From positions 180,433 through 244,432 of IMG/VR virus record IMGVR_UViG_3300017786_003484: DNA of 64,000 bases. The stretch is one strand, 5' to 3'. Below the pieces are notes generated by a model. The model ran no database searches and was not told where the DNA came from. It was given only the letters and a program-made list of their open reading frames with translations. Both the position numbers and the translations under genes were made by a program. How positions within the stretch are numbered: the first letter of the stretch is position 1; each line of letters opens with the position of its first letter. Shown here one piece after another: positions 15,441 through 62,556 of the stretch.

Positions 15441-15737
15441 ATGTTCATAGTCACAGCAACAACTGTCCGACATAACGGAGACCACGCCTGGCACTCCCGT
15501 ACATTAGAATTTAGACAATATTTTGATGCTACTTATTGTCAAACTGGCCAAGTGAAAGGAATGATGAGTACATCTTCCGTTGATGGAAAGACAAGAGTCA
15601 CAGAAACAAAATGGGTTGATCAAGATGCATATGATGTATTCTTGGCAGATGAGAAGTACATTGCTATTATTGCAGAACGTACAGCCTATAACGAAGAAAA
15701 TTCTCATGATTTTTCAGTTGAAAGAAGGGTAGAATAA
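15441..15737 (+). CDS. small protein, RxAYNxE family member 1
   Basis: Own TAAATA promoter (15354-15359), AGGAG SD; S.DG.TR..W..QDAYD.F.AD..R.AYN.E. Confidence 0.75.
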   Translation: MFIVTATTVRHNGDHAWHSRTLEFRQYFDATYCQTGQVKGMMSTSSVDGKTRVTETKWVDQDAYDVFLADEKYIAIIAERTAYNEENSHDFSVERRVE

Positions 15738-15738
15738 A

Positions 15739-16047
15739 ATGGCACAAATGACAAGAAAAAACATTGAAGTAAGACCTAGTACAGATATTCCATTCTTTGC
15801 TCAACATTCTTTAGTCAACAAGGTAGCACTTGCTGAAGATAATTCAGTTAATGCAAAAAGCAGAGGCATCTTAGGTAAAGGTTACGAAGAATCAATGGAT
15901 GGTTTAACAAGAACTTCTATTACAATTTTCGCAACAGGAGCTGATAGAAGAAACTATCATGAAAGAGATTCTATCAAGGCTTTCCAAGACGCTCGCCAAG
16001 CATATAATGCAGAGCACGGAATTGCTTATTCTGAGGAAGACTTTTAA
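15739..16047 (+). CDS. small protein, RxAYNxE family member 2
   Basis: RPSTDIPFF..S.DGLTR..RQAYNAEHGI. Confidence 0.75.
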   Translation: MAQMTRKNIEVRPSTDIPFFAQHSLVNKVALAEDNSVNAKSRGILGKGYEESMDGLTRTSITIFATGADRRNYHERDSIKAFQDARQAYNAEHGIAYSEEDF

Positions 16048-16070
16048 TAACTATAAAAAATAATAATAAA

Positions 16071-16313
16071 CTAGAGGCGCTTTTTAGCGTCTCTTTTTTT
16101 GAGTTTGACAGTAAATGATCCACCGTCTAAATTCATGTTAACTTCTCTAATATGTTGATTGCTATTACACCACGATTCAAATTCTAATAACATTTGCCCT
16201 TTGCCTGTAATAACTTTAATAGACTTTCTATTATCATAATAAGCATTACTGATGGCATCTTTAAAAATATTCCAGCCTTCGTGTATTCTTATTCCATGTA
16301 AATCAACTACCAT
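16071..16313 (-). CDS. stand-alone Smr-domain protein
   Basis: VVDLHG and KVITGKG motifs, GGSF.V.L. Confidence 0.8.
   Translation of the reverse strand: MVVDLHGIRIHEGWNIFKDAISNAYYDNRKSIKVITGKGQMLLEFESWCNSNQHIREVNMNLDGGSFTVKLKKRDAKKRL
16073..16100 (+). terminator. intrinsic terminator
   Basis: AGAGGCGC-TTTTTA-GCGTCTCT followed by a T-run. Confidence 0.7.
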
Positions 16314-16545
16314 CGTCTTTGCGTCCTCCTGCTTCTATGTTATCTAAATTATTTTCAGGATCTTCACCTCTAGCATCCTCATCAATTCGTCTTCTCATTC
16401 CAGTATCTGTGAACATACTGGTTGCTATAAAAGTACAAGCGGCTAACATTGGTATTACATATACCATTTTTTCTGTGGAGTAGGCTACTAGGTAAGTTGG
16501 TATTATTACTATTAATGCTTTTACAAAGCCCTCACGAAGTGCCAT
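16303..16545 (-). CDS. small two-TM membrane protein
   Basis: Two hydrophobic segments; coupled to neighbours. Confidence 0.65.
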   Translation of the reverse strand: MALREGFVKALIVIIPTYLVAYSTEKMVYVIPMLAACTFIATSMFTDTGMRRRIDEDARGEDPENNLDNIEAGGRKDDGS

Positions 16546-17803
16546 CTACAAATTTATCCAATCTATTCTGTATATATTCACGAGTTTGTTTTTCGTCTAT
16601 ATACATTGTCTCATATTTATTAGTAATACCAAACCTTGCATTGGGTCTTTGATTAGTTTCTACATTTGACACATTTTGCCTACTATAAAGTAAACCTACA
16701 TTTTCTATTTTTAACTTAAACATATAATAAGAATCATTGTTATCCAAATCATAAATGTAATCTCTGGCAACTTGCTTATATGTTGCGGCTGAACTTCCGA
16801 TCTTATCTCCGTTATTATTGTTACACATAGCCCATACTTGATAATCATCATTATGATACCAGTTAATAATTTTATTATCCGCAGTTTTTACATCAACTGT
16901 ATCATTAAAGTATACCATACCACGTTTTGCACAATTTGCATATTTTATATTAAAGATATACCACCAAAAGAAATCATGTAAACTGTTTATTTCAACTGGT
17001 GATGTCTTAGCATGTAAATCGAGTTTGTTATAGAACCTTTCTCCGAATCCTTCGGTAGGCAATTTAACACCGGTAAAAGGATAACCTTGTCTCTTTGGTA
17101 TTGAGAAATATAATATTAATAGGTCTTTAAAAGTACTATAAGGAACATCTGGATCAGTTACATATTTAATTTTATTTTCTATACTGGCAATACTATTACT
17201 ACTTAGACTATTTGTATACTGTTTCCATGTATAATATAATTGACTAGCAAAGGTAGTACCGAATAAACAATCTCCAGTATCTCCTGTAATAGGAAGGTAT
17301 CCTTCGTTAATTAAGTCATCATACTTGTTAAAATTTGCATCAATAATTTTAAACTTTCCTTGTATATATTCTTGCCAGAAGATAGGATTGTTTATAATAG
17401 CAGAAGACGTAGTGCATATTGCTATGTCTTTAAGATATTTTACTCCTATGTTTTTAATTAGTGAGCATAATATTAAAGTGGAATCAATACCACCTGAATA
17501 CATGACAGCATACTTGTTTCCTTTTCTTATACCATTGAGTATATCCATAGCACGATTATCAGTAATATCTTCAAACGTTTTGTTAAACTTTGGATCATAC
17601 TTAGGCATTTCTAATCCTGGCCAAACTTCTTCTTCCCAAGGAGTAGTCCATGTTGCTTCACATCGACTTGAAAGTCTATTTGGATTTAAACGTCTAGCTA
17701 TATCAATATAAAAACGGCCATCTTCATTAGTTCCGTGCCATGCATCAACCCAAAATTCATTTTGATAACCATTAAAAACAGTATTTGTTAAGATAGTTTT
17801 CAT
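16532..17803 (-). CDS. asparagine-synthetase-like PP-loop protein lacking glutaminase domain
   Basis: YSGGIDST, TGDTGDCLFG, DFFWW. Confidence 0.75.
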   Translation of the reverse strand: MKTILTNTVFNGYQNEFWVDAWHGTNEDGRFYIDIARRLNPNRLSSRCEATWTTPWEEEVWPGLEMPKYDPKFNKTFEDITDNRAMDILNGIRKGNKYAVMYSGGIDSTLILCSLIKNIGVKYLKDIAICTTSSAIINNPIFWQEYIQGKFKIIDANFNKYDDLINEGYLPITGDTGDCLFGTTFASQLYYTWKQYTNSLSSNSIASIENKIKYVTDPDVPYSTFKDLLILYFSIPKRQGYPFTGVKLPTEGFGERFYNKLDLHAKTSPVEINSLHDFFWWYIFNIKYANCAKRGMVYFNDTVDVKTADNKIINWYHNDDYQVWAMCNNNNGDKIGSSAATYKQVARDYIYDLDNNDSYYMFKLKIENVGLLYSRQNVSNVETNQRPNARFGITNKYETMYIDEKQTREYIQNRLDKFVDGTS

Positions 17804-18516
17804 ACTGAGAATCCTGTAACTCTACCACTAAAGCGATTTTGTTTTAATTCTTCGCTCTGCTCTTCGTCTATCATTTGATAAAATTGATTTCTATATAGCA
17901 CAACATCTGGAACTTTAGACCAAAATTCATTGATGAGTTTCATAGCATGATTTTTATTTCTTGCCTTATATAAGATTCTTAATATGGTCACCGAAATACC
18001 ATCTTCTACCTCGGTTTGGTCCACCGGTACAGATAAGCCGTTAGTGTCTATTCCACTTAGCTCTTCAATTATATGTTTAGACGGAAGTACATTAAAGATT
18101 AGATTAGTTATCCTAACAGCCTTAACACATTTTGCAATGAATATGGCTAATTCTTGTAAGTCATTTAATGCTTCTTTAGCAACTTCTTCTGTATAATCAT
18201 CTGGCCAACCTACATGTTCTACAGTACTATTAAGTCTTCTAAAAGATGGCCATTGCCTACTATAAAATATACTTGACGACGCATACATTAAATTTTTATC
18301 TTTAAGAGTATACTCTAAACAATTCTTTCCTCCAAAGCTAGGTTCGTTTTTAAGTGTTCCAACAACTAAAGAAAGTTTACTACTAAGAACCTGTGCAGTT
18401 TCAACAGCCGTATAAGGATCAAATTGATCAACAAATACTATTCGATCTAGCCCTGGAGCATACATCATATAGTTTCCGTAAAACGGTTCAAAGTTCTTTG
18501 TTTCATATGTAGCCAT
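17800..18516 (-). CDS. hypothetical protein coupled to the Asn-synthetase-like gene
   Basis: ATGA overlap; start moved to ATG 18516 (TAAGTA-N5-ATG). Confidence 0.7.
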   Translation of the reverse strand: MATYETKNFEPFYGNYMMYAPGLDRIVFVDQFDPYTAVETAQVLSSKLSLVVGTLKNEPSFGGKNCLEYTLKDKNLMYASSSIFYSRQWPSFRRLNSTVEHVGWPDDYTEEVAKEALNDLQELAIFIAKCVKAVRITNLIFNVLPSKHIIEELSGIDTNGLSVPVDQTEVEDGISVTILRILYKARNKNHAMKLINEFWSKVPDVVLYRNQFYQMIDEEQSEELKQNRFSGRVTGFSV

Positions 18517-18563
18517 AACATTACTTACTGGCAAAAATAGTTTCTGTTTTACCAATTTTTTTC

Positions 18564-18592
18564 TTGACAACTTACTTTATCTGTGTTACAAT
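18564..18592 (+). promoter_or_regulatory. sigma70-type promoter
   Basis: TTGACA-N17-TACAAT. Confidence 0.75.
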
Positions 18593-18619
18593 AAATATGG
18601 ACATAAATGAGGAGATTAA

Positions 18620-18838
18620 ATGAGAGGTGCAATAAAGAAAGACTTACGAGTCTTTGTAAATGAGGTTTTAGAAGCTAATGTAGGTCTAAGCCGTCAGCAA
18701 CTAGTAGTCATAGCGGCTCATCTTGCTAGGAGTAAAGGAATGAAACCAGTTGATGCTTTACTTGCATTAAAAGGTAACGGTGAAGTTCCAAAAGAAGATA
18801 TCGATCAATTAATTGAACATATAAATGAAGGAAACTAA
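18620..18838 (+). CDS. small hypothetical protein
   Basis: GAGGAG SD. Confidence 0.7.
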   Translation: MRGAIKKDLRVFVNEVLEANVGLSRQQLVVIAAHLARSKGMKPVDALLALKGNGEVPKEDIDQLIEHINEGN

Positions 18839-19148
18839 AATGGATATAAATGCAATTCTCGACTTTGATAAAGATTCAACTCTAGAGTCTCGTACTCAGC
18901 ATATTTCTACTTTCTTTAAAGAGCATAAAAATGTTCTTGTAAAGTTTACTAAAGTAGACGGAAGTTTGCGAGAGATGCCTAGTACGTTGCATGAATCATT
19001 AATCCCTGATCTAAAAACTGATTGGGCACCAGATGAAAGTAAAAAGAAAACTAACCCAAATGTAATGTCTGTGTATTGCACTGATGCAGATGGTTGGCGC
19101 TCTTTTCGTTTAGAAAATGTAATTTCGGTGACTGGATATGATAGTTAA
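18825..19148 (+). CDS. WYL_2/SH3-like phage protein
   Basis: VKFTKVDGSLREM.STL and GWRSFRLENVI. Confidence 0.8.
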   Translation: MKETKMDINAILDFDKDSTLESRTQHISTFFKEHKNVLVKFTKVDGSLREMPSTLHESLIPDLKTDWAPDESKKKTNPNVMSVYCTDADGWRSFRLENVISVTGYDS

Positions 19149-43335: not shown

Positions 43336-44196
43336 ATGGATAAACAGGTTAGAGTATGGGACGATTTAATTGACGCAGATCTACATAAAGCGGTATACGA
43401 TTGGGGACAAAGTGTTTCTTGGTATGCTAAAGCATTATTAGATGTTAACGGAGATTACATTAGAGGTGTCCCAAACGATAGAGATTTTGATGGCTGGGCA
43501 ATTCAGGAATATAATCCAACACTTCATGGAAACGGCAATCCTAGACCAGATACTCCAGAAAAGTATAGAGCAGAATTAGTTAGTCTCTGGAGGCATATGA
43601 CTGGTTGGGACGACGCTTCATTGCAGGAACGCAATCCAATTATATGGCAACTGTTTGATACAATTAATCAAAAATTATTTGACGGACAAGCCTCAACAAA
43701 TGGATTTCCAGAGCACCATGTTTTATCTGGTCCAAGAGAATACTATGTAGATGGCAAAGATTTTTATGAAAAATATGATGCTCCACGTGAAGCTAATTGG
43801 ACTTCTATGTTAAATTGTAGGAATACAATGCCAGGTAACAAGCACAGAGGCATTGGACAACGAATGGGACAAATTCATAAAGATACAGACTCATCGAAAG
43901 AACCTTCTCCTAATCATTTTAGTTTACTTTTTATTAGTAACTTAAATTGGGAACCAGATTGGGGAGGAGAGTTAAAATATTTTGGTGACGAACAGACTGG
44001 TTCCACTCAATGGAAAAATGGATACGATATAGGTTGGCCAACAGATATTGTTGGAAATAAACCAGGAAGAATTATAATGTACTCACATGATAAGATTCAT
44101 ATGACAGAGGCTCCAAAGACAACATCTCCGGAGTTTACTCAAAAAATAGCATTTAGGATAACTTTACCAGACTCATGGCTGAACTCGAATACATAA
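43336..44196 (+). CDS. prolyl-hydroxylase-like 2OG-Fe(II) oxygenase
   Basis: IHKD, W.PDWGGEL, KPGRII.Y....IH....P, IAFR. Confidence 0.8.
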   Translation: MDKQVRVWDDLIDADLHKAVYDWGQSVSWYAKALLDVNGDYIRGVPNDRDFDGWAIQEYNPTLHGNGNPRPDTPEKYRAELVSLWRHMTGWDDASLQERNPIIWQLFDTINQKLFDGQASTNGFPEHHVLSGPREYYVDGKDFYEKYDAPREANWTSMLNCRNTMPGNKHRGIGQRMGQIHKDTDSSKEPSPNHFSLLFISNLNWEPDWGGELKYFGDEQTGSTQWKNGYDIGWPTDIVGNKPGRIIMYSHDKIHMTEAPKTTSPEFTQKIAFRITLPDSWLNSNT

Positions 44197-45716
44197 TTGT
44201 TGTAAAGGACTCAACTGTTTGGGAAACATCTTTGTGGGACGAACTTACCAAAGACGGTTTAGGTGACGACTTCATTCCTACTAGAGGTGTTACTGTTATA
44301 AATGACAGACCTTTCAATACTAAATTAGCACATTTTAGTCTTACTGCTGAAGAAGCCGCAGAGATTGCAAAAGACGATCGTATTGAATCAATTGAACTGA
44401 ATCCAGAGCTAAATGATGAAATTGAATTTGGATTCTCTGGTTTAAGAGGAGTAAGAACCTACAACAGAGAATTATTTAATACAGCAGATAACCATACTAA
44501 CTGGGGCCTTGCAAGATGTATATCTGAAACAAACCAATTTAATAATGCTACAGTTGAAGTAGCACAGCAATATCCTTTTAACCTTGACGGAACTGGAGTT
44601 GATTTAATAGTAGTTGATTCTGGTGTAGAAGAAAACCATCCAGAGTTTGCTGTTAATGCTGACGGTACAGGTGGAAGCAGGGTTGTTAATTTTGATTGGT
44701 CTACATTAAATGTTCCTGGTTGTCCTACTGGCCCTAGCATTGGTGGTTACTTAGGAGATAGTGACGGACACGGAACAAATTGTGCCAGTATAGCCGCTGG
44801 AAATACACAAGGCTGGGCATCAGGCGCCGCAATATATTCTTTAAGAATCTTTCAAGGAATAGATATTACTGATGGATCTACATTAGGAGAAATTAGCACA
44901 AATATTGTTTGGGATATTATTAAAGCATTCCATGATAAGAAGGTAAACGACGGCAATACAAGACCAACTATCTGCACAAACAGTTGGGGTTTTAGAACTG
45001 CTTATACTAATATAACTTCAATAACATATAGAGGAGTAACTACATCAGCTACAAGTAGAGATACTAGCAAAGGTATGATTAATTTCCAACACGGAGTAAT
45101 GATTAACTCTCAATCAGTATCAGTAGCCAATGCATCATCTACTGGTGTTATAATGGTAGGAGCCGCTGGTAATTATTTTCATAAATCAGATGTCAATGGA
45201 GGATTAGATTACGATAACTTTTATACATCAAGTACATTAGGTAACGTGTTTTATCATCAAGGTAGTTCGCCAACTAACGCAGACGAAATGATTTGCGTAG
45301 GAGCAACTGCTTCTAATGATAACTTTGATACAAAAGTTAATTTTAGCGAGACTGGACCGAGGGTTGACATTTATGCTCCAGGTGATGGTATTATGGGAGG
45401 ATATGCTAACAAGTCATATAATACTGCGGCAGTCCAGGATCCTAGAGATCCTCAATACTTCTTAAACAAAGTATCAGGAACTAGCCAAGCAACACCTCAA
45501 GTAGCAGGAGTGATGTGTTTATTAGCACAAGCAGATCCAACAATTACGAAGACACAAATGCTCGACTTACTTAATAAGTATGCATTAGTTGACATAATGG
45601 ATACTGGTGCAAACGATACGGATTATACAAACGTTACTGGCTTACAAGGTGGACCTAACGTATTCTTACAAAATCCATTTTCATCACCTAACAGAGGCGG
45701 CATTACAAGCACATAA
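44175..45716 (+). CDS. subtilisin-family (S8) serine protease
   Basis: VVDSG, HGT.CAS.AAG, AAGN, SGTSQATPQVAG; N-terminal propeptide-like region. Confidence 0.93.
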   Translation: MAELEYIIVVKDSTVWETSLWDELTKDGLGDDFIPTRGVTVINDRPFNTKLAHFSLTAEEAAEIAKDDRIESIELNPELNDEIEFGFSGLRGVRTYNRELFNTADNHTNWGLARCISETNQFNNATVEVAQQYPFNLDGTGVDLIVVDSGVEENHPEFAVNADGTGGSRVVNFDWSTLNVPGCPTGPSIGGYLGDSDGHGTNCASIAAGNTQGWASGAAIYSLRIFQGIDITDGSTLGEISTNIVWDIIKAFHDKKVNDGNTRPTICTNSWGFRTAYTNITSITYRGVTTSATSRDTSKGMINFQHGVMINSQSVSVANASSTGVIMVGAAGNYFHKSDVNGGLDYDNFYTSSTLGNVFYHQGSSPTNADEMICVGATASNDNFDTKVNFSETGPRVDIYAPGDGIMGGYANKSYNTAAVQDPRDPQYFLNKVSGTSQATPQVAGVMCLLAQADPTITKTQMLDLLNKYALVDIMDTGANDTDYTNVTGLQGGPNVFLQNPFSSPNRGGITST

Positions 45717-46129: not shown

Positions 46130-47458
46130 ATGACGTATTTAATGAAACAAATTCCTCAGACAGCCGAGGAAGCACAAAAGAAATGGATATTCCCTAAATT
46201 ACACTGGTACACTCCAATCGTTAGGAACGAATTTGTTCCTATATGTCAAGGTAGACCTTTTGATCGTACAGAAACAGTTGACTTAGGTTGGAAACAAAAA
46301 ATATTATCTCCTATCCCAGAGTTTGAATATACATCAAAGAGCTTTACAGAAGTTTGTGCCGATAGAGCCGTTGAGATTGCTAATATGGCCAAAGAGCAGG
46401 GAAAGAAAGTTATTGTTACATGCTCCGGCGGAATGGATAGCACTTCTGTTATAGCGGCCTTTTTGATGTATACAGACATTGATATTGAATTAACATACTC
46501 TGAATCAGCAATTCTTGAATGGCCAGAGTTCCATACCTATTGTACTAGCCAGCCTAGGATTACTAGACTAATTGATTTTACATACATGCCTTTTTTAATG
46601 GAAAAATTAATTGAGGCAGGCAACTATATTATTGTAGGAGGAGATCCAGGAGACTTGATATTTGGCTCTAAGATGTATAGAGAAGATCAAAAAATATGGC
46701 AACCAGATGGATCTGAAATAGTATACAATATGGATCACTGGGCACCTGTTTGGGAAGGAGTTCCTTCTCATCATAGAGACTTCTTACAACCTATAGTAGA
46801 TGCATGTCCAGTAGACTTAGAAAACAATTATGATTTAACTTGGTGGCTTGGATTTTGTATGAAGTTTCAACTTACAGAAACTAGATTATGGATGTGTAGT
46901 AGAAAGATGGCTCCGGTTATTAACTTCTTTTCCTCAGCCGGATGTCAGCAATGGTCTATGTCAAATAGCTATGCTGTGAAATGTCCTAATAATAATTGGG
47001 ACGACTTAAAACACGAAGCAAAGAAACATTTACATCTATGGTTCCCAGATGATAGTGTTTGGCAACAAGTAAAAAGAGATAGCCTTGGCGGTGTATGGAC
47101 TGAACCACTTAATAGAGTGTTCTATGCATGGATAAGAGATTTACATGAAGCTAAGATAGATGCTATCGATTCCTATCTAGTTAATAACATTCCTGAACTA
47201 AGAGAAAAGAATTACTCATTTAAACAAGATAGATTAGATATACTTGATGGATATGATCATGGTAGAAAAATGCTTGGTATTGGTCCTACTCCTGATCCAG
47301 ATTTTGATGTACCTGAAGGAGCAGATACAACCAAACGCATTAGAGGACAGATGTATCCGGTATCTACTATTGATGAGGACTTTAATTTTGTTAACTGGCC
47401 TAGACATAAGATTGCTACTCGTGTTTGGCAAAAACATGAACTCAATGAGTTTGCATAA
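46130..47458 (+). CDS. asparagine-synthetase-like PP-loop protein (paralog of 16532)
   Basis: CSGGMDST, GGDPGDLIFG, DLTWW, FF. Confidence 0.75.
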   Translation: MTYLMKQIPQTAEEAQKKWIFPKLHWYTPIVRNEFVPICQGRPFDRTETVDLGWKQKILSPIPEFEYTSKSFTEVCADRAVEIANMAKEQGKKVIVTCSGGMDSTSVIAAFLMYTDIDIELTYSESAILEWPEFHTYCTSQPRITRLIDFTYMPFLMEKLIEAGNYIIVGGDPGDLIFGSKMYREDQKIWQPDGSEIVYNMDHWAPVWEGVPSHHRDFLQPIVDACPVDLENNYDLTWWLGFCMKFQLTETRLWMCSRKMAPVINFFSSAGCQQWSMSNSYAVKCPNNNWDDLKHEAKKHLHLWFPDDSVWQQVKRDSLGGVWTEPLNRVFYAWIRDLHEAKIDAIDSYLVNNIPELREKNYSFKQDRLDILDGYDHGRKMLGIGPTPDPDFDVPEGADTTKRIRGQMYPVSTIDEDFNFVNWPRHKIATRVWQKHELNEFA

Positions 47459-47554: not shown

Positions 47555-47995
47555 ATGGACTGTCAGCGAGAATTATTATCTGACTTAGGTTACCAACCTC
47601 GTCAAGGTTGGAACGATTTCATACAAAAAGAATTTGAATTATGGTGGAAGTTTACAGGAGAAGAAACTCGTTTCGTCTTCAGAGCAGAACCTAAACATCA
47701 AAACTCAGCAGGAGTTCTACATGGCGGTGTACTAGCCGCTTACTTAGATCATTGCATGGGCGGAGCCTGCTATAATATTAGTAAAGGTAAGACTGGTTAT
47801 ACTTTACAGTTCTCAATTCAATATCTAAGAATATGCAAAACAAACCGATGGATATTTACTCATGTAACAAGACAAGGTGGCACTGGTGCTCATCTTCAAT
47901 TGAAAGCAACTGCTAGAGTAAATTCGGAAGAAGGAAATCTAATTGCAGAGGCCCAAGGTACATTTATGATTTCAAAGAATGATGCTAAAAAATAA
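47555..47995 (+). CDS. PaaI-family hotdog thioesterase
   Basis: HQNSAGVLHGG..AAYLD, YL, AEAQGTF. Confidence 0.88.
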   Translation: MDCQRELLSDLGYQPRQGWNDFIQKEFELWWKFTGEETRFVFRAEPKHQNSAGVLHGGVLAAYLDHCMGGACYNISKGKTGYTLQFSIQYLRICKTNRWIFTHVTRQGGTGAHLQLKATARVNSEEGNLIAEAQGTFMISKNDAKK

Positions 47996-48006: not shown

Positions 48007-48180
48007 ATGGAAAGTATTTTAATTTGGGTAGGAATTGCTGTAGTAACAGCAAGTATATTAGGCATTATAATAAGGCAGGCATTTATGCAAATAGATAAAG
48101 ATTTAGAATGGTTAGACTATAGTAACTTATGGTGTCCTCTAGATACTCCTGACTCGTCAAAGAAAAAGGGTAGAAATTAA
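48007..48180 (+). CDS. 57 aa single-TM peptide (not in ORF track)
   Basis: MESILIWVGIAVVTASILGIII... Confidence 0.5.
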   Translation: MESILIWVGIAVVTASILGIIIRQAFMQIDKDLEWLDYSNLWCPLDTPDSSKKKGRN

Positions 48181-48192
48181 TCTACCCTTTTT
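48163..48192. terminator. bidirectional intrinsic terminator
   Basis: AAAAAGGGTAGA-AATTAA-TCTACCCTTTTT between convergent genes. Confidence 0.85.
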
Positions 48193-48204: not shown

Positions 48205-48585
48205 TTAATCTGCGGCAGTTAATTTTTCCATATCTTTGTCTTCAACTTCAAATGTTTCAAACTTGTCGTTAACAATCATCTGTTGACCAGATATTTTTGA
48301 GCCTGCATTTCTAAAATTAAGAATAACTGGATCTGATTCAAATTCATCATAATCTGCTTTTGAATAGAATGTCATTGATGTTCTAATTTTTTTGATTGCT
48401 CCTGTTTCATCAACTTCAGAATCATTGTTAAAGCCAATAATTCTTTTAGTTTCTATGTATTTGCTGAAAACATAATCTTTATATTCTTGGTTGTCTTTGA
48501 GATGCATTGCACCGTCAAAACCGCCTGAAATTTTGCCACCTTTTGGGTCTGCAACTTCTCTTTCAATTCTAAAACGTTCTTCCAT
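48205..48585 (-). CDS. small protein, divergent RxAYNxE-family-like member
   Basis: YIETK.I..T.M.F.SKADYDEF.SDP resembles 15441; own TAAGTA promoter and TAAGGAG SD. Confidence 0.65.
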   Translation of the reverse strand: MEERFRIEREVADPKGGKISGGFDGAMHLKDNQEYKDYVFSKYIETKRIIGFNNDSEVDETGAIKKIRTSMTFYSKADYDEFESDPVILNFRNAGSKISGQQMIVNDKFETFEVEDKDMEKLTAAD

Positions 48586-48852
48586 TTAATAAGTCTCCTT
48601 AAGTAACTAATTTCTTAATACAGAAAATACCGGCCGGTATTACTATTTTAAGATTATTAAATATATTAGGGTTGGATATCCCTTACTTGCAAGTGTACGA
48701 CATCATTGCCGTTAACCCTAGTAACATATACTTATCCTAAACTGTAAAATATAATGTAAAATGGCTCAGTCATGCTAAAACAGCAATTCAGCCTTTACAC
48801 TTCGTACGGCTCAAAAGGGCTATCTATTTAATTGATTGTCATATATACAACT

Positions 48853-49030
48853 GTTAAAGACAAAGCGACCTCAGCTTTTAAAAAATGAGTGGCACCAGGA
48901 AAGACTGGAGCTCATCAAGGCTTTACAAAGTGATTGACGCCATGCAAAGACATGGGGTATTGCTATTCCTCAAGCATATAAATTAAGTCGTAGGTATTTT
49001 AGCAGACCGATTGCTCTGACTAATCCTATG
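48853..49030 (+). ncRNA. candidate structured RNA / 5' leader
   Basis: ORF-free; twin hairpins CCAG-GAAAGA-CTGG and CCATG-CAAAGA-CATGG plus further stems. Confidence 0.5.
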
Positions 49031-49052
49031 AACAGGAAGACGAGATAATTTT

Positions 49053-49232
49053 ATGTTACAAACATTATTTAAAACCTTGCATGAGAATATTTTTACAAAC
49101 AAAAATCACTCTATGCAAGGACAGGAAGAACTAATAAAATACTGCCGTGCAGAATACGGTAAAGAATGGAGATTTGCTTATGCTGAAATTTCCGATCATC
49201 AGAACAAAGACATAGGGAGAGTAATTAAATGA
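49053..49232 (+). CDS. 59 aa protein (not in ORF track)
   Basis: ..ELIKYCRAEYGKEWRFAY..; ATGA overlap with next gene. Confidence 0.65.
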   Translation: MLQTLFKTLHENIFTNKNHSMQGQEELIKYCRAEYGKEWRFAYAEISDHQNKDIGRVIK

Positions 49233-52853: not shown

Positions 52854-53095
52854 TGAAAGTATACGATCTAGACAAAGAGCTAACTAAGTTAAAGACATTG
52901 GCTGGTATTATTGATACATCTGGTCGTAAGGATGATTCAAATCCTCAAAGTAGTCCACTAACTTATGGTGGAACAGAACGAGCTGAGTATATGAGAAAAC
53001 ATAAGATACAGCCAGGCACAGACGAATGGTTTAAGTTATGGTTTGCACGAGAGGCTCTTACTGGTGAAGACAGGTTCCCTAGAAATAAGAAATAA
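52853..53095 (+). CDS. conserved small phage protein
   Basis: LK.LAGI and I.PGT.EWFKLWF motifs. Confidence 0.7.
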   Translation: MKVYDLDKELTKLKTLAGIIDTSGRKDDSNPQSSPLTYGGTERAEYMRKHKIQPGTDEWFKLWFAREALTGEDRFPRNKK

Positions 53096-54596
53096 TTATC
53101 ACGCAATAGTATTAGGTGGTATTCTAAGAGATTACGCAGGCCGACCTTTAGGCCCTTACAGATTAAGAACAGCCTGTAAAAACGAAGGTTTCAATTTAAA
53201 AGTAATAGATTATGCATGGATTATGACAGACTTTCGTTTGTTAAATCTACTTGGCAGGTTAATAACTAATGATACATTAGTATTTGGGATATCTAACGTA
53301 TGGTTATCTAACTCTGCAGAAGTAGCAAACAAAGAAAGTAAAGTAAACAGATGGATGACTCCGCTATTCTGGACTGAAGTAAAACGTAGATGGCCTTGGG
53401 TTGATATTGTTATAGGAGGTACTAAGCCTGCCTTAGTGCAAGGTGCTGAACTGCTAAAGCCGCACACTAAATGGTGGCTTACTGGTTTCTCAGATATATC
53501 TTTCCCTCAATTACTTAGGCATATACAAGACAATAAACAAGAAATTATACACAGGGTTGACTTAGACGGAGTTAAGGTAGTAGAAAGTGATATTCATTAC
53601 AAAGTTGAAAACATGGACGAGCTTGAGACAGAGTATGAACTTGAAGATAACTTTAAACAGTTTCAGCCATTACCATTAGAGGTAAGCAGAGGTTGTATTT
53701 TTAAATGCGCCTTTTGCTCTCATCCTTTCTTAGGAAAGAAAAGTTACGATTACATTAGGTCACCCGAGTCGTTAGCAAATGAATTAAAAAGAAACTACGA
53801 GCTATTTAAAACAACTAGATACTTCTTAACTGATGATACGTTTAACGATAGCATAGAGAAACTGCAAAGACTTGAAAGAGCAATAGAATTAAGCGGAATA
53901 CCTGAGTTTAGTTTTGTTGGTTACTTAAGAGCAGAACTAATTGCAACTAAGCCTGAGATGATCCCTTACCTAAAAAGACTTGGCTGTAAAGGAGGAACTG
54001 TTGGAATTGAAAGCATGAATAACTATGCTAGGAGAGTTATTGGCAAAGGAATGGATATAGAAAGAGTATTAGATGGATTAGCAGACTTAAAAGCAGAAAC
54101 AGGTTTAAAATTGCACACAGGCATGATTGTTGGGTTACCCGGAGATACTGCTGATGATGCTTTTAAATGGCATGAGCGGTTTGCTAACGATAGAATCTTT
54201 AGCGATTGGACATTTCAGCAACTAGGATTAATATTCAATGAAGAAGGTGAAGGACTAAGTTTATTTGAAAAGGATCCAGCTAAGTTTGGATATAGACTTT
54301 CAAATAGGTTTGATGCACAAGGACCTCGAAGCAGGGGTTGGATTAATGATGTAGGTTCAACAGAACACGATTGTAAAAAAGCGGCACAAGAGGTAATGTT
54401 ACTAGCAAGACATACCTGTACTGCTGGTGGATTTGGTGTTGGTGATGCTTGGTATCATGGACTTACTGATGAAGAAATAGAAACTTTAACTATTGACGAA
54501 TTACGGTTAGGAGAACGGGGAATTAAATCAGGTATTATTCGTGCAAAGGAGAGTGAGAACTCTATTTCTGGACTAACTAATAGACAACATCAGTAA
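53064..54596 (+). CDS. B12-binding-domain radical SAM enzyme (paralog of 3589)
   Basis: SRGCIFKCAFC, TDDTFND, GIES, IVGLP; GTG 53064 with GAGG is the likely start. Confidence 0.9.
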   Translation: MKTGSLEIRNNYHAIVLGGILRDYAGRPLGPYRLRTACKNEGFNLKVIDYAWIMTDFRLLNLLGRLITNDTLVFGISNVWLSNSAEVANKESKVNRWMTPLFWTEVKRRWPWVDIVIGGTKPALVQGAELLKPHTKWWLTGFSDISFPQLLRHIQDNKQEIIHRVDLDGVKVVESDIHYKVENMDELETEYELEDNFKQFQPLPLEVSRGCIFKCAFCSHPFLGKKSYDYIRSPESLANELKRNYELFKTTRYFLTDDTFNDSIEKLQRLERAIELSGIPEFSFVGYLRAELIATKPEMIPYLKRLGCKGGTVGIESMNNYARRVIGKGMDIERVLDGLADLKAETGLKLHTGMIVGLPGDTADDAFKWHERFANDRIFSDWTFQQLGLIFNEEGEGLSLFEKDPAKFGYRLSNRFDAQGPRSRGWINDVGSTEHDCKKAAQEVMLLARHTCTAGGFGVGDAWYHGLTDEEIETLTIDELRLGERGIKSGIIRAKESENSISGLTNRQHQ

Positions 54597-55893: not shown

Positions 55894-55980
55894 GCGAGCA
55901 TGGCGGAATAGGTAGACGCAACGGACTTAAAATCCGTTATCAATTATGGTGTGTGGGTTCGAGTCCCTCTGCTCGCACCA
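55894..55980 (+). tRNA. tRNA-Leu(TAA)
   Basis: GCGAGCA/TGCTCGC acceptor, ACGGA-CTTAAAA-TCCGT, long variable arm, encoded CCA. Confidence 0.96.
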
Positions 55981-55982
55981 AC

Positions 55983-56057
55983 TGGCGTATAGTTCAATGG
56001 TAGAACCGACCGCTCATAACGGTCTTGTTGGGAGTTCGATTCTCTCTGCGCCAACCA
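55983..56057 (+). tRNA. tRNA with CAT anticodon (Ile2-lysidine or elongator Met)
   Basis: TGGCGTA/TGCGCCA, GACCG-CTCATAA-CGGTC, encoded CCA; lacks the initiator GGG/CCC stem. Confidence 0.92.
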
Positions 56058-57350: not shown

Positions 57351-57530
57351 ATGATACCTAAAGCACCAAATGTTAAATTTGAAGTCTTCTTAGTTAATTT
57401 TGGCTATGTATGCGGAGCAACTGATACCTTAGAGAAAGCTATCAAGCTGGCTAAGAAAACAGGTTTTCAGTGTAACATTTTCAAATCAAATGATCCATTT
57501 ACTCCGATTAAATGGGTTTCTCCTGTATGA
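57351..57530 (+). CDS. 59 aa protein (not in ORF track)
   Basis: MIPKAPNVKFEVFLVNFGY...; GGGGAG SD. Confidence 0.65.
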   Translation: MIPKAPNVKFEVFLVNFGYVCGATDTLEKAIKLAKKTGFQCNIFKSNDPFTPIKWVSPV

Positions 57531-57628
57531 AGCTCTATCCGTTGAAAGATATTTGTTTGGCTACAGTAATTGTTATTGTAGTCGTATTTGGTCAAGACAT
57601 CATCACCTACTTAGGGAGATTTGTATGA
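57527..57628 (+). CDS. 33 aa membrane peptide (not in ORF track)
   Basis: ATGA overlaps at both ends. Confidence 0.5.
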   Translation: MKLYPLKDICLATVIVIVVVFGQDIITYLGRFV

Positions 57629-58029
57629 CAATGCATTTAGTTGGTCCTTATATGACCACAACAGTTTATAGTCGTAAGAAAAGTAAGCCTAAGAAGAAAA
57701 CACAGGCTCAACTTCAGTCTGAGGCTAAACACGAAAAGTATCTGCGAAAGATGGGTGTTCATCCTGATCAAAGGAAAGAAGTACAAAATAAGTTTAATAA
57801 AGGGGATAAGTGTTACGGTAGCACGGCTGGCTCCAACCCAGTAAGAGAGGGTTCAATTCCTTCATCCTCTGCCAATTCTTTGTTCTATGATAAAAGTATG
57901 GCTAAGCCTGCACCTAAAGTTTATACAGGTACAGAGATTGTTGGAATTGCTGTCATGCATAAATCTAATGCCGTTCCTATTAGAGGAAAGAAACAAGCTG
58001 AAGAAATAGCTAGAATGCGGAGAGGCTAA
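57625..58029 (+). CDS. conserved basic phage protein containing a nested tRNA
   Basis: MTMHLVGPY.TT..HEK.L..MGVHPDQ N-part and YTG....GIA.MHKSNAVP....A.EIA.MRRG C-part; GGGAG SD before ATG 57625. Confidence 0.8.
   Translation: MTMHLVGPYMTTTVYSRKKSKPKKKTQAQLQSEAKHEKYLRKMGVHPDQRKEVQNKFNKGDKCYGSTAGSNPVREGSIPSSSANSLFYDKSMAKPAPKVYTGTEIVGIAVMHKSNAVPIRGKKQAEEIARMRRG
57801..57874 (+). tRNA. tRNA-Trp(CCA), nested in CDS 57625-58029
   Basis: AGGGGAT/ATCCTCT acceptor, GTGT/GCAC D-stem, GCTGG-CTCCAAC-CCAGT, GAGGG-TTCAATT-CCTTC, G73 plus CCA; atypical A8/U14. Confidence 0.85.
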
Positions 58030-59577: not shown

Positions 59578-59589
59578 AGGAGATCCAAA

Positions 59590-60012: not shown

Positions 60013-60071
60013 TTAGGTTTACAAGTCTTAAATCTAATAATAAATATTTCTAAGTAACCCAGGAGAGTTTT

Positions 60072-61142
60072 ATGCGGAAGTTAGAAAAAGAAACCTACTT
60101 GAACCCAAGATGGGGTTCAATGTTTGAAGGAATGTCCTATAACGAAATAATGGACTTGGGATTTTCCTTTTGGCATGCTAAGTTAGTTGAAAGACAATTC
60201 TTTTGCTGGCGTGGTTTAGATTCTAAAATGACTGATGAGCAACTATGGGACTTAGGTACATTGGTTGGTAAGCCTTGGGATACAGAGGGTTATAAAGTTG
60301 GAGCAGATATCTCAGGCTTTAAATTTGATGGAACTACTGACAAAGAAAATGAAGCAGTGGTTGACTCTTCTACAGGACAAGATATTATTGAGGATATGAA
60401 AACCTCAAAGGATAAGCCAGTTAGTTATTTCTTTTCTGGTAATACTATATTTGGTGACAAATATATGGCTTATCATTCAGACCTCCCTCACACATTAGCA
60501 ACTGGACACGAACCTTATCCTGCTAGAGCTTTATTGATGGTTAATATGCCTGAGGATAGTTCAGGTGATACACAATGGCTTGATATGGAAGGTGCTTGGG
60601 AACAAATGACTGATGAAGAAAAGGCTCCTTATCAAGGGCTATTCATTAAACAACAACATATGTATCATCCAGGAAGAAAGTATAGCACATTTCCTTTTCT
60701 CAAACAGAATCCGTGGAATGGTAAATGGTCACCAAGATTAAACTGTATTGCAGGAAATAGAAAAGCAAAGGCTTGGATAGCACCGGGCGGAGTAATTAAA
60801 AAAGGAGTAGGATCTTTAGGTATCAAAGAAGCAAGGCAACTTGTTTTTGATTTATACGATATACTAGAAACTAAAGAACATGCCTTGTATACACATCAAT
60901 GGCAGAATGGTGATATTCTCCTCTACACCAATTGGCCTTCAGTTCATGCTAGAGCCGGAGTTAATATTAACCAAGACAGCGGTGAAAAGAGAGAATTAAA
61001 AAGAATTACTATTGATACACCGTTTCCAGATGATTATATGGTTGACAGAGGTAGTGATTATTTTCCTGCTAGAGTTAAGAATCCTAAATACAGTGAGTTC
61101 CCTCAAATTGAAGAGCCATTTCCAGGCTTCTTTAAAAAGTAA
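60072..61142 (+). CDS. TauD/TfdA-family 2OG dioxygenase
   Basis: YHSD, GDT.W.D...AW, HQWQ.GD.L...N...HAR, R.L.R. Confidence 0.85.
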   Translation: MRKLEKETYLNPRWGSMFEGMSYNEIMDLGFSFWHAKLVERQFFCWRGLDSKMTDEQLWDLGTLVGKPWDTEGYKVGADISGFKFDGTTDKENEAVVDSSTGQDIIEDMKTSKDKPVSYFFSGNTIFGDKYMAYHSDLPHTLATGHEPYPARALLMVNMPEDSSGDTQWLDMEGAWEQMTDEEKAPYQGLFIKQQHMYHPGRKYSTFPFLKQNPWNGKWSPRLNCIAGNRKAKAWIAPGGVIKKGVGSLGIKEARQLVFDLYDILETKEHALYTHQWQNGDILLYTNWPSVHARAGVNINQDSGEKRELKRITIDTPFPDDYMVDRGSDYFPARVKNPKYSEFPQIEEPFPGFFKK

Positions 61143-62172
61143 GATTATCTATAATATTCCATTGTTTTTGCACATAACGTTTAAAGACCTCTCGGTTAGC
61201 TAAAAGAGCTGGATACATCTTTTTATACATATCTTGCTTTTCTTTTCTAGTCATTTGCCTTACCCAATCTAATATTCTTGCTATATTAATTGGTATCATA
61301 TTATAATCTTCAATTGAATTAATTCCCAGTCTAATTGGCCAATAATCCAAAAAGGTCTCAAAGCCTTGTTCTTTTAAATGTTCATAAATGGCAGGGTTTC
61401 CATTTATAATAAATGGACGCAGTCCTAAGATTGGTTTAAAGATCTTTTCTGAAAGAAATGGATAGTCTTCACGATAATATTGATCAGTTTCGCTGACTAT
61501 ATTAATTAAATGATTTCTCCATATATCTCCATCTCCTAAAGAAAAGATATCATTAGGAATTGAATTGGCTCCGCTTGACTCTTGTAAAGATATTCCAGGA
61601 GGATTTTCATTTAAATGAAATAACCAACCTTTTTCTTTTGCTCTATTACCATACCCAGTATCTTCATATCCGAGTGTAACGATACCATGCTGATTTAATC
61701 TTAACAAATAGAGTTGACTAACCAGTTCAACTCTATGCCTAGTTGGCTTTCTATTATACGAAATAAAATCATATTTGAAATCTGGGTTTAAAAACATTTC
61801 TTGTTCAGTTGGTTTGATAAAATTATCTTCTACATTGATTGCCCAAAAAGAATAACGATTTCTTTTATCTGTAGCATGATTGCCAATGATATACACATTT
61901 GGCCTTATTGATAACTGATGTAGTGCATCATCAATTCCATTATTCACATAAGGAGGATCAAAGTCTGTCATTAAAAATATATTGGCATCTACGTCATTAA
62001 TGATTTCTTCTGCAATATGATATTTTCCAAACGTTAAATTATAAACATAATTCTTTTTATAAGGAAACTCTTCATCTATTTGTAACCTTATTCTATTCCA
62101 TATCTTCTGCCAGACTATACCACTTCGATTGGTAGGAAACAGCGGATCGGTCATTAACACAGGTAAGCTCAT
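61132..62172 (-). CDS. glycosyltransferase-related phage protein (putative)
   Basis: YNRKP..HR..LV, INIVSET..FLSEKIFKPI...RPFII.G. Confidence 0.5.
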   Translation of the reverse strand: MSLPVLMTDPLFPTNRSGIVWQKIWNRIRLQIDEEFPYKKNYVYNLTFGKYHIAEEIINDVDANIFLMTDFDPPYVNNGIDDALHQLSIRPNVYIIGNHATDKRNRYSFWAINVEDNFIKPTEQEMFLNPDFKYDFISYNRKPTRHRVELVSQLYLLRLNQHGIVTLGYEDTGYGNRAKEKGWLFHLNENPPGISLQESSGANSIPNDIFSLGDGDIWRNHLINIVSETDQYYREDYPFLSEKIFKPILGLRPFIINGNPAIYEHLKEQGFETFLDYWPIRLGINSIEDYNMIPINIARILDWVRQMTRKEKQDMYKKMYPALLANREVFKRYVQKQWNIIDNLTF

Positions 62173-62187
62173 AGTAATATTTAACCC

Positions 62188-62217
62188 AAAAAGAAACCCG
62201 GCACTAGACCGGGTTCC
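62188..62217 (-). terminator. intrinsic terminator
   Basis: Minus strand AACCCGG-TCTAGTG-CCGGGTT followed by TCTTTTT. Confidence 0.85.
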
Positions 62218-62238
62218 TCAAATCTCTGCATCTAATGA

Positions 62239-62556
62239 TTACAGATTAAACTTAGGCATATCGATAATGATTTCTTTTTCATCAATACCTTTTTCAGTAT
62301 TGTATGCTTTACGAGCATCATTAATTGCTTTCATTCCTGCATCAGCAACATATGCATCATATAGTTCTACTCTAGGAAAGAACTTGATATAATAGAGTCT
62401 TAGTCCATTGTGGAAGTGTCTACGAGCAGTGATCGATCTATGCTCTTTTTTAGAAGCGGCACTTACTGCGGCTTTCTGTTCATCTGTGGTTTTATACCAT
62501 TCGATGTCTTTTGATGTTTTCTTATACCTACGGATAAGCATTTTAGCTCCAGCCAT
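62239..62556 (-). CDS. small protein, RxAYNxE family member
   Basis: DIEWY..NGL..YDAY.AD..RKAYNTEKGI; own TAAATA promoter, AAGGAG SD and terminator. Confidence 0.75.
   Translation of the reverse strand: MAGAKMLIRRYKKTSKDIEWYKTTDEQKAAVSAASKKEHRSITARRHFHNGLRLYYIKFFPRVELYDAYVADAGMKAINDARKAYNTEKGIDEKEIIIDMPKFNL

What the first reader, a model, noticed from the sequence alone, without database searches (positions are those of the whole stretch)
15441..62556. Dispersed family of small, independently expressed proteins sitting next to tailoring enzymes
Seen: 15441, 15739 and 62239 share a layout (aromatic pair near the N-terminus, (S)xD/NG(L/K), a helix, then R-x-A-Y-N-x-E-x-(G)); 48205 is a more distant match (YIETK.I, F.SKADYDEF.SDP versus W.DQDAYDVF.AD). 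Each locus has its own TAA(A/G)TA promoter, a hairpin-rich leader, a strong AGGAG SD and a dedicated terminator. Two loci converge on operons carrying an Asn-synthetase-like enzyme; the third lies directly upstream of a glycosyltransferase-like gene and near TauD. Two leaders share ACGAAACAT. Inference: an undescribed system in which abundant ~100-aa proteins (possibly a ferredoxin-like/ABM barrel fold) act as scaffolds, carriers or substrates for the phage's modification enzymes.
Basis: partly seen in the sequence, partly recalled or inferred. Interest (0 to 1): 0.72.

Follow-up and report, generated by a model that had tools for sequence, protein, structure and literature searches.

The report
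Abundant small barrel proteins of giant phage
Four small genes in this uncultured marine giant phage encode an unnamed family of ~100-residue barrel-fold proteins that are transcribed strongly from late-type promoters and repeatedly sit beside two kinds of modifying enzyme, but their function is still unknown.

Summary
A (15441-15737), B (15739-16047), C (62239-62556) and, more distantly, D (48205-48585) are the only four members in the 244-kb contig of a real family. It has 278 sequence clusters in public data, almost all ~100 aa and all from uncultured viruses, with no Pfam or PHROG model.

Corrections:
- A and B are one bicistronic, translationally coupled unit, not two.
- D's promoter is unproven.
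- The shared ACGAAACAT is not significant.

A T4-type late-promoter motif, also found upstream of the tail sheath gene, precedes A/B and C. All three units end in strong terminators. Two marine metatranscriptomes show the A+B RNA several-fold deeper than most flanking contigs.

- C-type members form a clade that stays next to the phage's single TauD dioxygenase.
- A/B/D-type members are often next to a new, expanded Asn-synthetase-like PP-loop family (random-placement p about 6e-4).

The linkage is not universal. No carrier or substrate role was tested. My favoured reading is an organic-acid-binding or organic-acid-processing dimer working with those enzymes.

The parts
15354..15359 (+). TAAATA late-promoter-like motif (context GCTAAATAC) upstream of A
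   Evidence: Sequence read. The motif is enriched about 4-fold in intergenic DNA and oriented toward genes. The same GCTAAATA form precedes the tail sheath gene. T4 and cyanophage late promoters are TATAAATA / NATAAATA (PMC2984593).
15377..16041 (+). Span of the RNA-library contigs covering A and B together
   Evidence: X1 has one 665-nt contig at depth 24.2 (flanks 6.2 or less). X2 has one 657-nt contig at depth 7.9 (flanks 6.6 or less). X3 has two contigs at 6.8 and 5.6 (flank up to 5.1). The oligo-dT run X5 shows no enrichment.
15427..15431 (+). AGGAG Shine-Dalgarno of A
   Evidence: It lies 9 nt before the ATG at 15441.
15441..15737 (+). Gene A, 98 aa, dimeric alpha+beta barrel family member
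   Evidence: Family HMM E 9e-32. AF2 pLDDT 94.2. Fold matches.
15739..16047 (+). Gene B, 102 aa, tandem paralogue of A, translationally coupled (TAA-A-ATG)
   Evidence: hhalign to the A family 95.8%. HMM E 3e-23. Predicted A-B dimer ipSAE 0.69 against best control 0.00.
16073..16094 (+). Intrinsic terminator after B
   Evidence: 9-bp stem plus T-run. Fold z -3.26.
16532..17803 (-). Asn-synthetase-like PP-loop ATPase (423 aa), convergent on A/B
   Evidence: SGGIDS motif and 6 paralogues in the contig. No Pfam hit. Nearest named Atlas clusters are Asn_synthase/QueC.
46130..47458 (+). Second PP-loop paralogue (442 aa) in the operon convergent on D
   Evidence: SGGMDS motif. BLASTP 1.2e-9 to the 423-aa protein. 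Profile E 5e-109. Linkage to D is kept in an orthologous locus at 60% identity.
48161..48190 (-). Terminator after D (bidirectional; flanked by an A-run and a T-run)
   Evidence: Sequence read. Fold z -4.41. The consensus scan missed it because the stem extends into the T-run.
48205..48585 (-). Gene D, 126 aa, divergent family member
   Evidence: HMM E 1.3e-5 against a next-best ORF of 1.1. hhalign 82%. AF2 model has the same topology at pLDDT 73.
48595..48599 (-). AGGAG Shine-Dalgarno of D
48626..48641 (-). Perfect palindromic hairpin in D's leader, followed by TTTTCTG
   Evidence: It is conserved upstream of orthologues at 94% and 60% protein identity.
60072..61142 (+). TauD-family 2OG dioxygenase, the only one in the 244-kb contig
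   Evidence: Pfam 2.5e-15. Single copy. TauD lies next to C-type family members in other contigs.
61132..62172 (-). 346-aa gene directly downstream of C, own TAAATA 4 nt from its ATG; possible glycosyltransferase (weak lead)
   Evidence: No Pfam hit. Atlas places it in viral-only clusters. The nearest named cluster is GT10 at 0.79, and the domain is fused elsewhere to methyltransferase or epimerase domains.
62191..62219 (-). Intrinsic terminator after C
   Evidence: 12-bp stem. Fold z -3.53.
62239..62556 (-). Gene C, 105 aa, basic (pI 9.7) family member of the TauD-linked clade
   Evidence: HMM E 2e-26. Clade support 97/98. The transcript region is held at 0.57-0.82 of sampled words in seven or more metatranscriptomes.
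62565..62569 (-). AGGAG Shine-Dalgarno of C
62621..62626 (-). TAAATA late-promoter-like motif (GGCTAAATAG) upstream of C, overlapping a sigma-70-like -10

Best explanation
Shown:
- A, B, C and D belong to one previously unnamed, virus-restricted family of ~100-residue proteins with the dimeric alpha+beta barrel (ABM/Dabb-like) fold.
- The host contig is an uncultured marine myovirus of the T4 superfamily.
- The genes form three short, terminator-bounded units. A/B and C are preceded by the phage's late-promoter motif.
- In two metatranscriptomes the A+B RNA is several-fold deeper than most flanking contigs.

Well supported:
- A and B are co-translated and pair as a heterodimeric barrel. Tandem pairs and fused double-domain versions recur elsewhere in the family.

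Inferred:
- The three most conserved motifs are T-R-P at the end of strand 1, D-G-L-T in the strand 2-3 hairpin, and R-x-A-Y-N-x-x-N-G-I at the helix 2-strand 4 junction. From the fold topology, all three lie at one pole of the domain and carry two near-invariant arginines.
- I therefore read these proteins as binders or cofactor-free processors of an anionic organic acid (carboxylate or sulfonate), made in near-stoichiometric amounts late in infection.
- They would work on the substrate, intermediate or product of the neighbouring enzymes. For the C-type clade that is the TauD-type dioxygenase. For the A/B/D types it is the adenylating Asn-synthetase-like PP-loop enzymes. In some phages the partners are adjacent TRAP/TTT organic-acid transporters.
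For: Family and paralogue count.

Fold.

Viral restriction.

Late promoter. An independent T4-like contig shows the order gp23 terminator, TATAAATA, family member. Literature.

RNA: (X1 24.2 against 6.2 or less; X2 7.9 against 6.6 or less).

Heterodimer:
- One search gives ipSAE 0.69 against a best control of 0.00. That mark was reached by 58 of 80 solved complexes and 2 of 110 mismatched pairs.
- Tandem pairs are found in L008, L023, L029 and L044.
- Fused forms are P0021 and P0022.

Enzyme linkage:
- PP-loop genes lie adjacent in L021 and L028, flank the member in L020, and lie within 1-2.5 kb in L032, G004 and G002.
- Fisher p is 5.6e-4 over 11 loci in 6 contigs.
- TauD is immediately convergent in L036, L043 and L044 and one gene away in the window. 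It is single-copy in G000, G007 and G008.
- The TauD-linked members form a supported clade.

Organic-acid theme: DctP/TctC lie directly upstream in L034, TctA downstream in L033, and DctQMP after the pair in L021.
Against: - No ligand, activity or interaction was measured. The pole-clustering of motifs is deduced from topology, not from coordinates.
- Several members have none of these neighbours within about 6-8 kb (L022, L024, L031; contig fragments G006 and G009).
- Only 2 of the 7 PP-loop paralogues in this genome have a family member nearby.
- The random-placement null ignores accessory-gene islands, and the TauD linkage is partly inherited synteny.
- Contig depth is a poor measure of expression, and one of the four runs (oligo-dT) shows no enrichment.
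- Paralogues often pass complex prediction, so homodimers are not excluded.
- D lacks the R-x-AYN motif.
Confidence: 0.35

Rival explanations
1. The small barrels are themselves the protein substrates or carriers of the neighbouring enzymes. Abundant late proteins would be hydroxylated, amidated or otherwise modified on conserved Asp/Asn residues by the AspH-like, TauD-like and Asn-synthetase-like enzymes.
For: - The transcript level is higher than that of the neighbouring enzyme genes, which fits a stoichiometric target.
- Conserved Asp (D-G-L-T) and Asn (A-Y-N) sit in exposed loops.
- The neighbours include an Asp/Asn-hydroxylase-family gene at 14132-14731, PP-loop enzymes, a B12-radical SAM gene and S8 and G2 peptidases. 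These enzyme classes are typical of peptide tailoring.
Against: - The proteins have none of the features of known carriers (beta-grasp fold with C-terminal GG; acyl-carrier helix bundle) or of precursor peptides (hypervariable core, cleavage motif). Tails after strand 4 are short and unconserved.
- TauD-family enzymes are known mainly for small-molecule substrates (background knowledge).
- No mass-shift data exist.
Confidence: 0.2
2. The proteins have a function unrelated to their neighbours. Proximity to TauD and PP-loop genes only reflects the packing of accessory genes into hypervariable islands and inherited synteny.
For: - About 60% of the locus types examined lack a nearby PP-loop gene.
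- The neighbours are heterogeneous: Rieske, desaturase, ribonucleotide reductase and replication genes.
- Homing endonucleases (HNH, GIY-YIG) flank two of the loci, which fits plastic regions.
- ABM/Dabb proteins are usually autonomous small enzymes (one search hit list).
Against: - TauD is single-copy yet adjacent in four diverged locus variants.
- PP-loop adjacency recurs in phages of different types, including directly after gp23 in a classical T4-like module.
- Fisher p is 5.6e-4.
Confidence: 0.25
3. They are virion-associated proteins (head decoration, internal or accessory structural proteins) made late in large amounts.
For: - They carry the same late-promoter motif as the sheath, tube and fibre genes.
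- They form a short, strongly terminated, abundant mRNA.
- One member lies directly after the major capsid gene with its own TATAAATA.
- Paralogous families of small late proteins are common in large phages (background knowledge).
Against: - All four lie outside the structural module, among metabolic and accessory genes.
- Near-invariant polar residues (two Arg, Tyr-Asn) look like a ligand site rather than a lattice contact.
- Fold matches are all to small enzymes or ligand binders, and none is to a known decoration protein.
- Only 1 of 60 relatives gave a weak hit to a capsid-assembly PHROG.
- No virion proteome exists for any carrier phage.
Confidence: 0.15

Closest known systems
ABM domain proteins (Pfam PF03992; e.g. 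ActVA-Orf6, SnoaB, IsdG, YgiN, LsrG)
   Same: Size of about 100 aa, beta-alpha-beta-beta-alpha-beta topology and a predicted dimer through the sheet. VIA Z is 8.5-9.7 with rmsd 2.4-2.8 A over about 90 of 98 residues. Foldseek TM is about 0.6.
   Different: None of the four proteins hits the Pfam model, and only 2 of 60 relatives reach E 7e-4. Sequence identity is 5-17%. The conserved motifs (T-R-P, D-G-L-T, R-x-AYN-x-x-NGI) are family-specific. The family is virus-only, late-expressed and occurs in several copies per genome.
Dabb / stress-responsive A/B barrel and EthD families (PF07876, PF07110), and the unannotated 'dimeric ferredoxin-like proteins from uncultured marine organism' (PDB 2od6, 2op5)
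   Same: Same superfold. 2od6 is the best VIA match (Z 9.9, 94 residues aligned). Dabb and EthD clusters are structural neighbours in the Atlas.
   Different: Identity is 10% or less. There is no profile match apart from 1 of 60 relatives at E 0.008. Those proteins are cellular, and for most of them the function is also unknown.
Stand-alone RAM / Lrp-AsnC ligand-binding domains
   Same: A small beta-alpha-beta-beta-alpha-beta domain that dimerises and binds amino or organic acids, acting stoichiometrically rather than catalytically. This is a functional analogy drawn from background knowledge.
   Different: They did not appear among the fold-search matches listed. No sequence relation was shown. 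This is a lead only.
PP-loop enzyme plus small partner protein pairs (TtuA-TtuB, NcsA-Urm1 sulfur carriers)
   Same: A PP-loop ATPase gene lies next to a gene for a small, roughly 100-aa protein.
   Different: Those partners have a beta-grasp fold with a C-terminal Gly-Gly. Here the fold is ferredoxin-like and the C-termini are unconserved. The PP-loop proteins here resemble the Asn synthetase C-domain, not TtuA.

Membership tests
ABM (PF03992) | Sequence match to the family HMM above the gathering score | tested here: not met
   No ABM hit for A-D at E<=1. Only 2 of 60 relatives match, with best E 6.9e-4.
ABM / dimeric alpha+beta barrel superfold | Single beta-alpha-beta-beta-alpha-beta domain of about 100 aa | tested here: met
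   AF2 model of A at pLDDT 94 with elements E2-10, H22-33, E38-45, E51-58, H61-86, E89-97. D has the same order at pLDDT 73. VIA gives Z>=8 for 83 chains, and the 50 entries shown are ABM, Dabb, EthD and related dimeric ferredoxin-like barrels.
ABM / dimeric alpha+beta barrel superfold | Dimerisation through the beta-sheets | tested here: inconclusive
   The A+B complex model scores ipSAE 0.69 against a best control of 0.00. The interface is on strand 2/helix 1 of A and strands 2-3 of B. This is a prediction only and cannot separate hetero- from homodimers.
ABM enzymes (cofactor-free oxygenases, IsdG-type haem oxygenases) | Catalytic activity and family-specific catalytic residues | not testable with these tools
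   The near-invariant residues here are two Arg plus A-Y-N and G. No assay is possible with these tools.
Dabb (PF07876) | Sequence match to the family HMM | tested here: not met
   1 of 60 relatives at E 0.0078. None of A-D matches.
T4-type late genes | TATAAATA-like -10 element a short distance upstream, shared with structural genes | tested here: met
   GCTAAATA-type motif upstream of A and C, and the same motif upstream of the sheath, tube and fibre genes. Not met for D. Consensus taken from PMC2984593.
T4-type late genes | Transcript starting just downstream of the motif, late in infection | tested here: inconclusive
   RNA contigs begin at 15377-15380, 18-21 nt after the motif. Contig ends are not mapped 5' ends, and there are no time-course data.
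Asparagine synthetase B-like PP-loop enzymes (neighbours 16532-17803, 46130-47458) | PP-loop SGGxDS motif | tested here: met
   SGGIDS and SGGMDS are present. S, G, G, D and S are invariant in the 13-sequence alignment.
Asparagine synthetase B-like PP-loop enzymes | Match to PF00733 and an N-terminal glutaminase domain | tested here: not met
   1 of 13 members hits PF00733, at E 0.043, and there is no GATase hit. The PDB profile search matches only the PP-loop stretch. The Atlas structural neighbour is an AsnB-related cluster at TM 0.56.
Ubiquitin-like sulfur/acyl carriers partnering PP-loop or adenylating enzymes | Beta-grasp fold and a conserved C-terminal Gly-Gly | tested here: not met
   The fold is ferredoxin-like. 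The C-termini are variable and not GG.
Glycosyltransferase (gene 61132-62172) | Match to a GT family model | tested here: not met
   No Pfam hit at E<=1. The only support is an Atlas feature score of 0.79 to GT10 clusters, which is below the lead threshold.

The most novel reading that the evidence does not exclude
The small barrels, the expanded Asn-synthetase-like PP-loop family and the TauD-type dioxygenase together form a new late-acting phage modification system. In it, the abundant barrel dimers are the carriers or the covalently modified targets, for example adenylated, amidated or hydroxylated on the conserved Asp/Asn pole. This would be a protein-based tailoring pathway with no described counterpart in viruses.
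Probability: 0.15. Interest if true: 0.85.

Novelty: new variant of a known kind. Interest (0 to 1): 0.58.

Why it matters
These proteins come from uncultured large aquatic phages.

Showing what they bind or do would annotate hundreds of viral gene clusters. It would also give a handle on two enzyme sets whose roles in marine phages are unknown. One is an unclassified Asn-synthetase-like PP-loop family with seven copies in this genome. The other is the widespread phage TauD-type dioxygenases.

If the barrels prove to be partners or targets of those enzymes, that would reveal a new kind of late-infection chemistry, possibly tied to organic-acid or sulfonate metabolism in the sea.

Tried and rejected
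- Pairwise BLASTP alone is marginal (A-B E 0.5; A-D no alignment). Homology needed profiles.
- Word-indexed protein searches found only relatives at 66-99% identity.
- Single-protein scans of IMG/VR with B and C found nothing. The 60-sequence alignment had no searchable stretch. A 12-sequence subset worked.
- tblastn of A, C, P0044, P0048 and P0056 against 50,697 phage records gave no match.
- The family profile and the PP-loop profile are both absent from the nearest cultured jumbo phages, Atu_ph07, PA5oct and Phosso.
- Megablast of the window region against phages gave nothing.
- Rfam found only four tRNAs and no known RNA in the leaders or in the 467-nt gap upstream of D.
- Literature searches for the fold or PP-loop genes in phages returned nothing.
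- The idea that ACGAAACAT is a shared regulatory element is rejected as unsupported.
- The idea that the similarity is chance is rejected.
- P0064 (Caenorhabditis, 9 stretches) is treated as a spurious repeat hit.

Full report
**Source**

The window is bases 180433-244432 of a 244,432-bp IMG/VR virus record (contig VMHT01025236.1). It has 35.6% G+C and is estimated 74% complete. Its tail sheath is 44-46% identical to those of Agrobacterium phage Atu_ph07 and Pseudomonas phage PA5oct. PHROG matches identify sheath, tube, fibre and virion proteins. It is therefore an uncultured marine jumbo myovirus of the wider T4-like assemblage. No cultured phage is close.

**The observation**

The four ORFs are present as described: A 15441-15737(+), B 15739-16047(+), C 62239-62556(-) and D 48205-48585(-). 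None hits Pfam or PHROGs at E<=0.01.

- Pairwise BLASTP is only suggestive: B-C 1e-5, A-C 3e-4, A-B 0.5, and no alignment for A-D.
- Against all 1032 ORFs of the contig, B and C are reciprocal best non-self hits at E 0.012.
- Profiles built from close metagenomic relatives settle the question. The A family against the B family gives 95.8% (E 6.7e-9, 87 columns). C against B gives 82% and C against A 67%, over the C-terminal half.
- An exhaustive HMMER search of 1.84 billion representatives with the joint profile found 278 clusters at E<=1e-3. Almost all are 90-115 aa, and two are 200-aa tandem fusions.
- A 60-sequence alignment shows the family signature: x-T-R-P near the end of strand 1, S-x-D-G-L-T, and R-x-A-Y-N-x-x-N-G-I. 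Two arginines are near-invariant.
- Its HMM scores A 9e-32, C 2e-26, B 3e-23 and D 1.3e-5 among the contig's ORFs. The next ORF scores 1.1.
- D aligns over helix 1 to helix 2 and lacks the last motif. A D-orthologue profile matches the family profile at 82%.

So there are exactly four paralogues in the 244 kb, and D is a divergent one.

**Fold**

AlphaFold2 models A at pLDDT 94.2 as beta-alpha-beta-beta-alpha-beta. D gives the same order at pLDDT 73.

- Foldseek hits in the PDB and AFDB are ABM, Dabb, EthD and other dimeric ferredoxin-like barrels, with TM about 0.6-0.7.
- VIA-align gives Z up to 9.9 with about 90 of 98 residues aligned. Eighty-three chains score Z>=8, and the entries listed are small dimeric ferredoxin-like barrels.
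- BFVD contains true family members from uncultured Caudovirales (TM 0.84-0.94).
- The nearest ESM Atlas clusters are 100% viral.
- Only 2 of 60 members touch the ABM HMM weakly, and 1 touches Dabb.

**Expression signals**

A and B are not independent. A's stop and B's start are separated by one base, and B has no promoter motif of its own.

- TAAATA is about four-fold enriched in the 5.5% of the contig that is intergenic (52 of 216 copies). Of those 52, 45 point toward a gene within 150 nt. Seven of eight GCTAAATA copies are intergenic.
- The same motif precedes the sheath, tube and fibre genes as well as A and C. It resembles the T4 TATAAATA and cyanophage NATAAATA late promoters (PMC2984593).
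- In an unrelated T4-like contig, a family member follows the gp23 terminator with a canonical TATAAATA and an AGGAG site.
- AGGAG sites precede A, C and D.
- All three units end in terminators with fold z-scores from -3.3 to -4.4.
- Leader structure is significant only for C (z -3.1).
- The shared ACGAAACAT is compatible with chance. Nine of 100 shuffles give two copies, and the two copies sit in different structural contexts.
- D has no convincing promoter. It does have a conserved perfect hairpin in its leader.

Contigs from four RNA libraries were laid on 13500-19000.

| Run | Contig(s) over A+B | Depth over A+B | Depth of flanking contigs |
|---|---|---|---|
| X1 | 15377-16041 | 24.2 | 6.2 or less |
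| X2 | 15380-16036 | 7.9 | 6.6 or less |
| X3 | two contigs | 6.8 and 5.6 | up to 5.1 |
| X5 (oligo-dT) | 15436-15586 | 2.2 | no enrichment |

This supports an abundant bicistronic RNA, with the tool's caveat that contig depth is a poor measure of expression. C's transcript region is held at 0.57-0.82 of sampled words in at least seven metatranscriptomes.

**Dimer**

The A+B complex model scores ipSAE 0.69 against a best control of 0.00. That mark was reached by 58 of 80 solved complexes and 2 of 110 mismatched pairs. The interface is sheet-edge to sheet-edge. Tandem pairs recur in L008, L023, L029 and L044, and fused double-domain proteins exist. Together with the translational coupling, a heterodimeric barrel is the most economical reading. 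Homodimers are not excluded.

**Neighbours**

- The contig carries nine SGGxDS ORFs. Seven form one paralogous family (profile E<=1e-87), including 16532-17803 and 46130-47458.
- This family has no Pfam model. It matches solved structures only across the PP-loop. Its nearest named Atlas clusters are Asn_synthase/QueC.

In other contigs, family members lie close to such genes.

| Locus or contig | Position of the PP-loop gene(s) relative to the barrel gene |
|---|---|
| L021 | directly upstream of one |
| L028 / G001 | directly downstream of one |
| L020 | flanked by four |
| L032 | 1.4 kb away |
| G004 | 1.0 kb away |
| G002 | 2.5 kb away |

Random placement within each contig gives a Fisher p of 5.6e-4 over 11 loci in 6 contigs.

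A maximum-likelihood tree places C and its orthologues with the L036, L043 and L044 members in a supported clade (97/98). Every one of these lies convergent on, or one gene from, a TauD-family dioxygenase. That gene is single-copy in G000, G007 and G008. TRAP or TTT organic-acid transporter genes lie beside members in L021, L033 and L034.

Against this:
- L022, L024 and L031, and the contig fragments G006 and G009, have none of these genes nearby. G007 and G008 lack the PP-loop family but carry TauD beside the barrel.
- Five of the seven PP-loop paralogues here have no barrel gene nearby.
- The null model ignores accessory-island structure.
- Both the barrel family and the PP-loop family are absent from Atu_ph07, PA5oct and Phosso.

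**Interpretation**

What is shown: a new virus-only barrel family with four paralogues, late-type signals, and A+B RNA that assembles deeper than most of its neighbours. What is supported: an A-B dimer and non-random linkage to TauD and to the PP-loop family. What is inferred: the function.

The three conserved motifs fall at one end of the sheet in this topology and include two arginines. The recurrent neighbours all handle carboxylates or sulfonates. I therefore favour an organic-acid-binding or organic-acid-processing dimer that works with those enzymes (0.35).

The rivals are:
- Function unrelated to the neighbours (0.25).
It is not excluded, but the proteins lack every hallmark of known carriers.
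- Virion-associated proteins (0.15).

**Verdict**

The family is a new variant within a known superfold. Its deployment in phages is undescribed and experimentally tractable.

Noticed in passing
G000:C1 119049-151474, plus window 16532-17803 and 46130-47458: There are seven paralogues (345-488 aa) of an unclassified Asn-synthetase-like PP-loop family in one phage contig, plus two other SGGxDS ORFs. One of those (window 2963-3589, 208 aa) looks QueC-sized. The family has no Pfam model, is viral in the Atlas, and is present in five of the nine other IMG/VR contigs searched (G001-G005; absent from fragments G006-G009).
   Followed up: partly
window 14728-15288 (-) and 62743-63078 (+): An HNH endonuclease sits between the Asp/Arg-hydroxylase-like gene and A. 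A GIY-YIG endonuclease sits just upstream of C. Homing-type nucleases therefore flank two of the three loci, and both are conserved in relatives.
   Followed up: no
window 48586-49052: This is a 467-nt stretch without ORFs between D and the divergent gene at 49053. It contains a perfect palindromic hairpin (48626-48641) followed by a T-rich run about 40 nt before D's start. The hairpin is conserved in an orthologue at 60% protein identity. There is no Rfam match.
   Followed up: partly
L021 8001-12549: A T4-like contig carries, right after the major capsid gene, a family member, a PP-loop gene and a complete DctQ-DctM-DctP TRAP transporter operon. L033 and L034 carry TctA, TctC and DctP genes. 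Phage-encoded organic-acid transporters are unusual auxiliary genes.
   Followed up: no
window 11637-11710, 55894-55977, 55983-56054, 57801-57871: Four tRNA genes. The one at 57801-57871 lies inside the ORF listed at 57490-58029, so that ORF call is doubtful.
   Followed up: no
window 62617-62645 (-): A sigma-70-like TTGTCA-17-TAGAAT overlaps the TAAATA motif of C. C may therefore have overlapping early-type and late-type promoters, as reported for some cyanophage genes.
   Followed up: no
window 13509-14132, 44175-45716, 47555-47995, 53043-54596, 16071-16313: Other accessory genes in the window are a Peptidase_G2-like protein, an S8 subtilase, a 4HBT thioesterase, a 517-aa radical SAM protein and a small Smr-domain protein. 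The relative's locus also shows PTPS, dCMP deaminase and Fe-S assembly genes.
   Followed up: no
context of P0027 (no DNA held): A family member sits in another large phage that encodes ribosomal protein S21, IF3, ClpX, HSP20 and an S8 peptidase. About 3-5 kb away lie a PP-loop ATP_bind_3 gene, an acyl-carrier (PP-binding) gene, a GT2 glycosyltransferase and an acetyltransferase.
   Followed up: no
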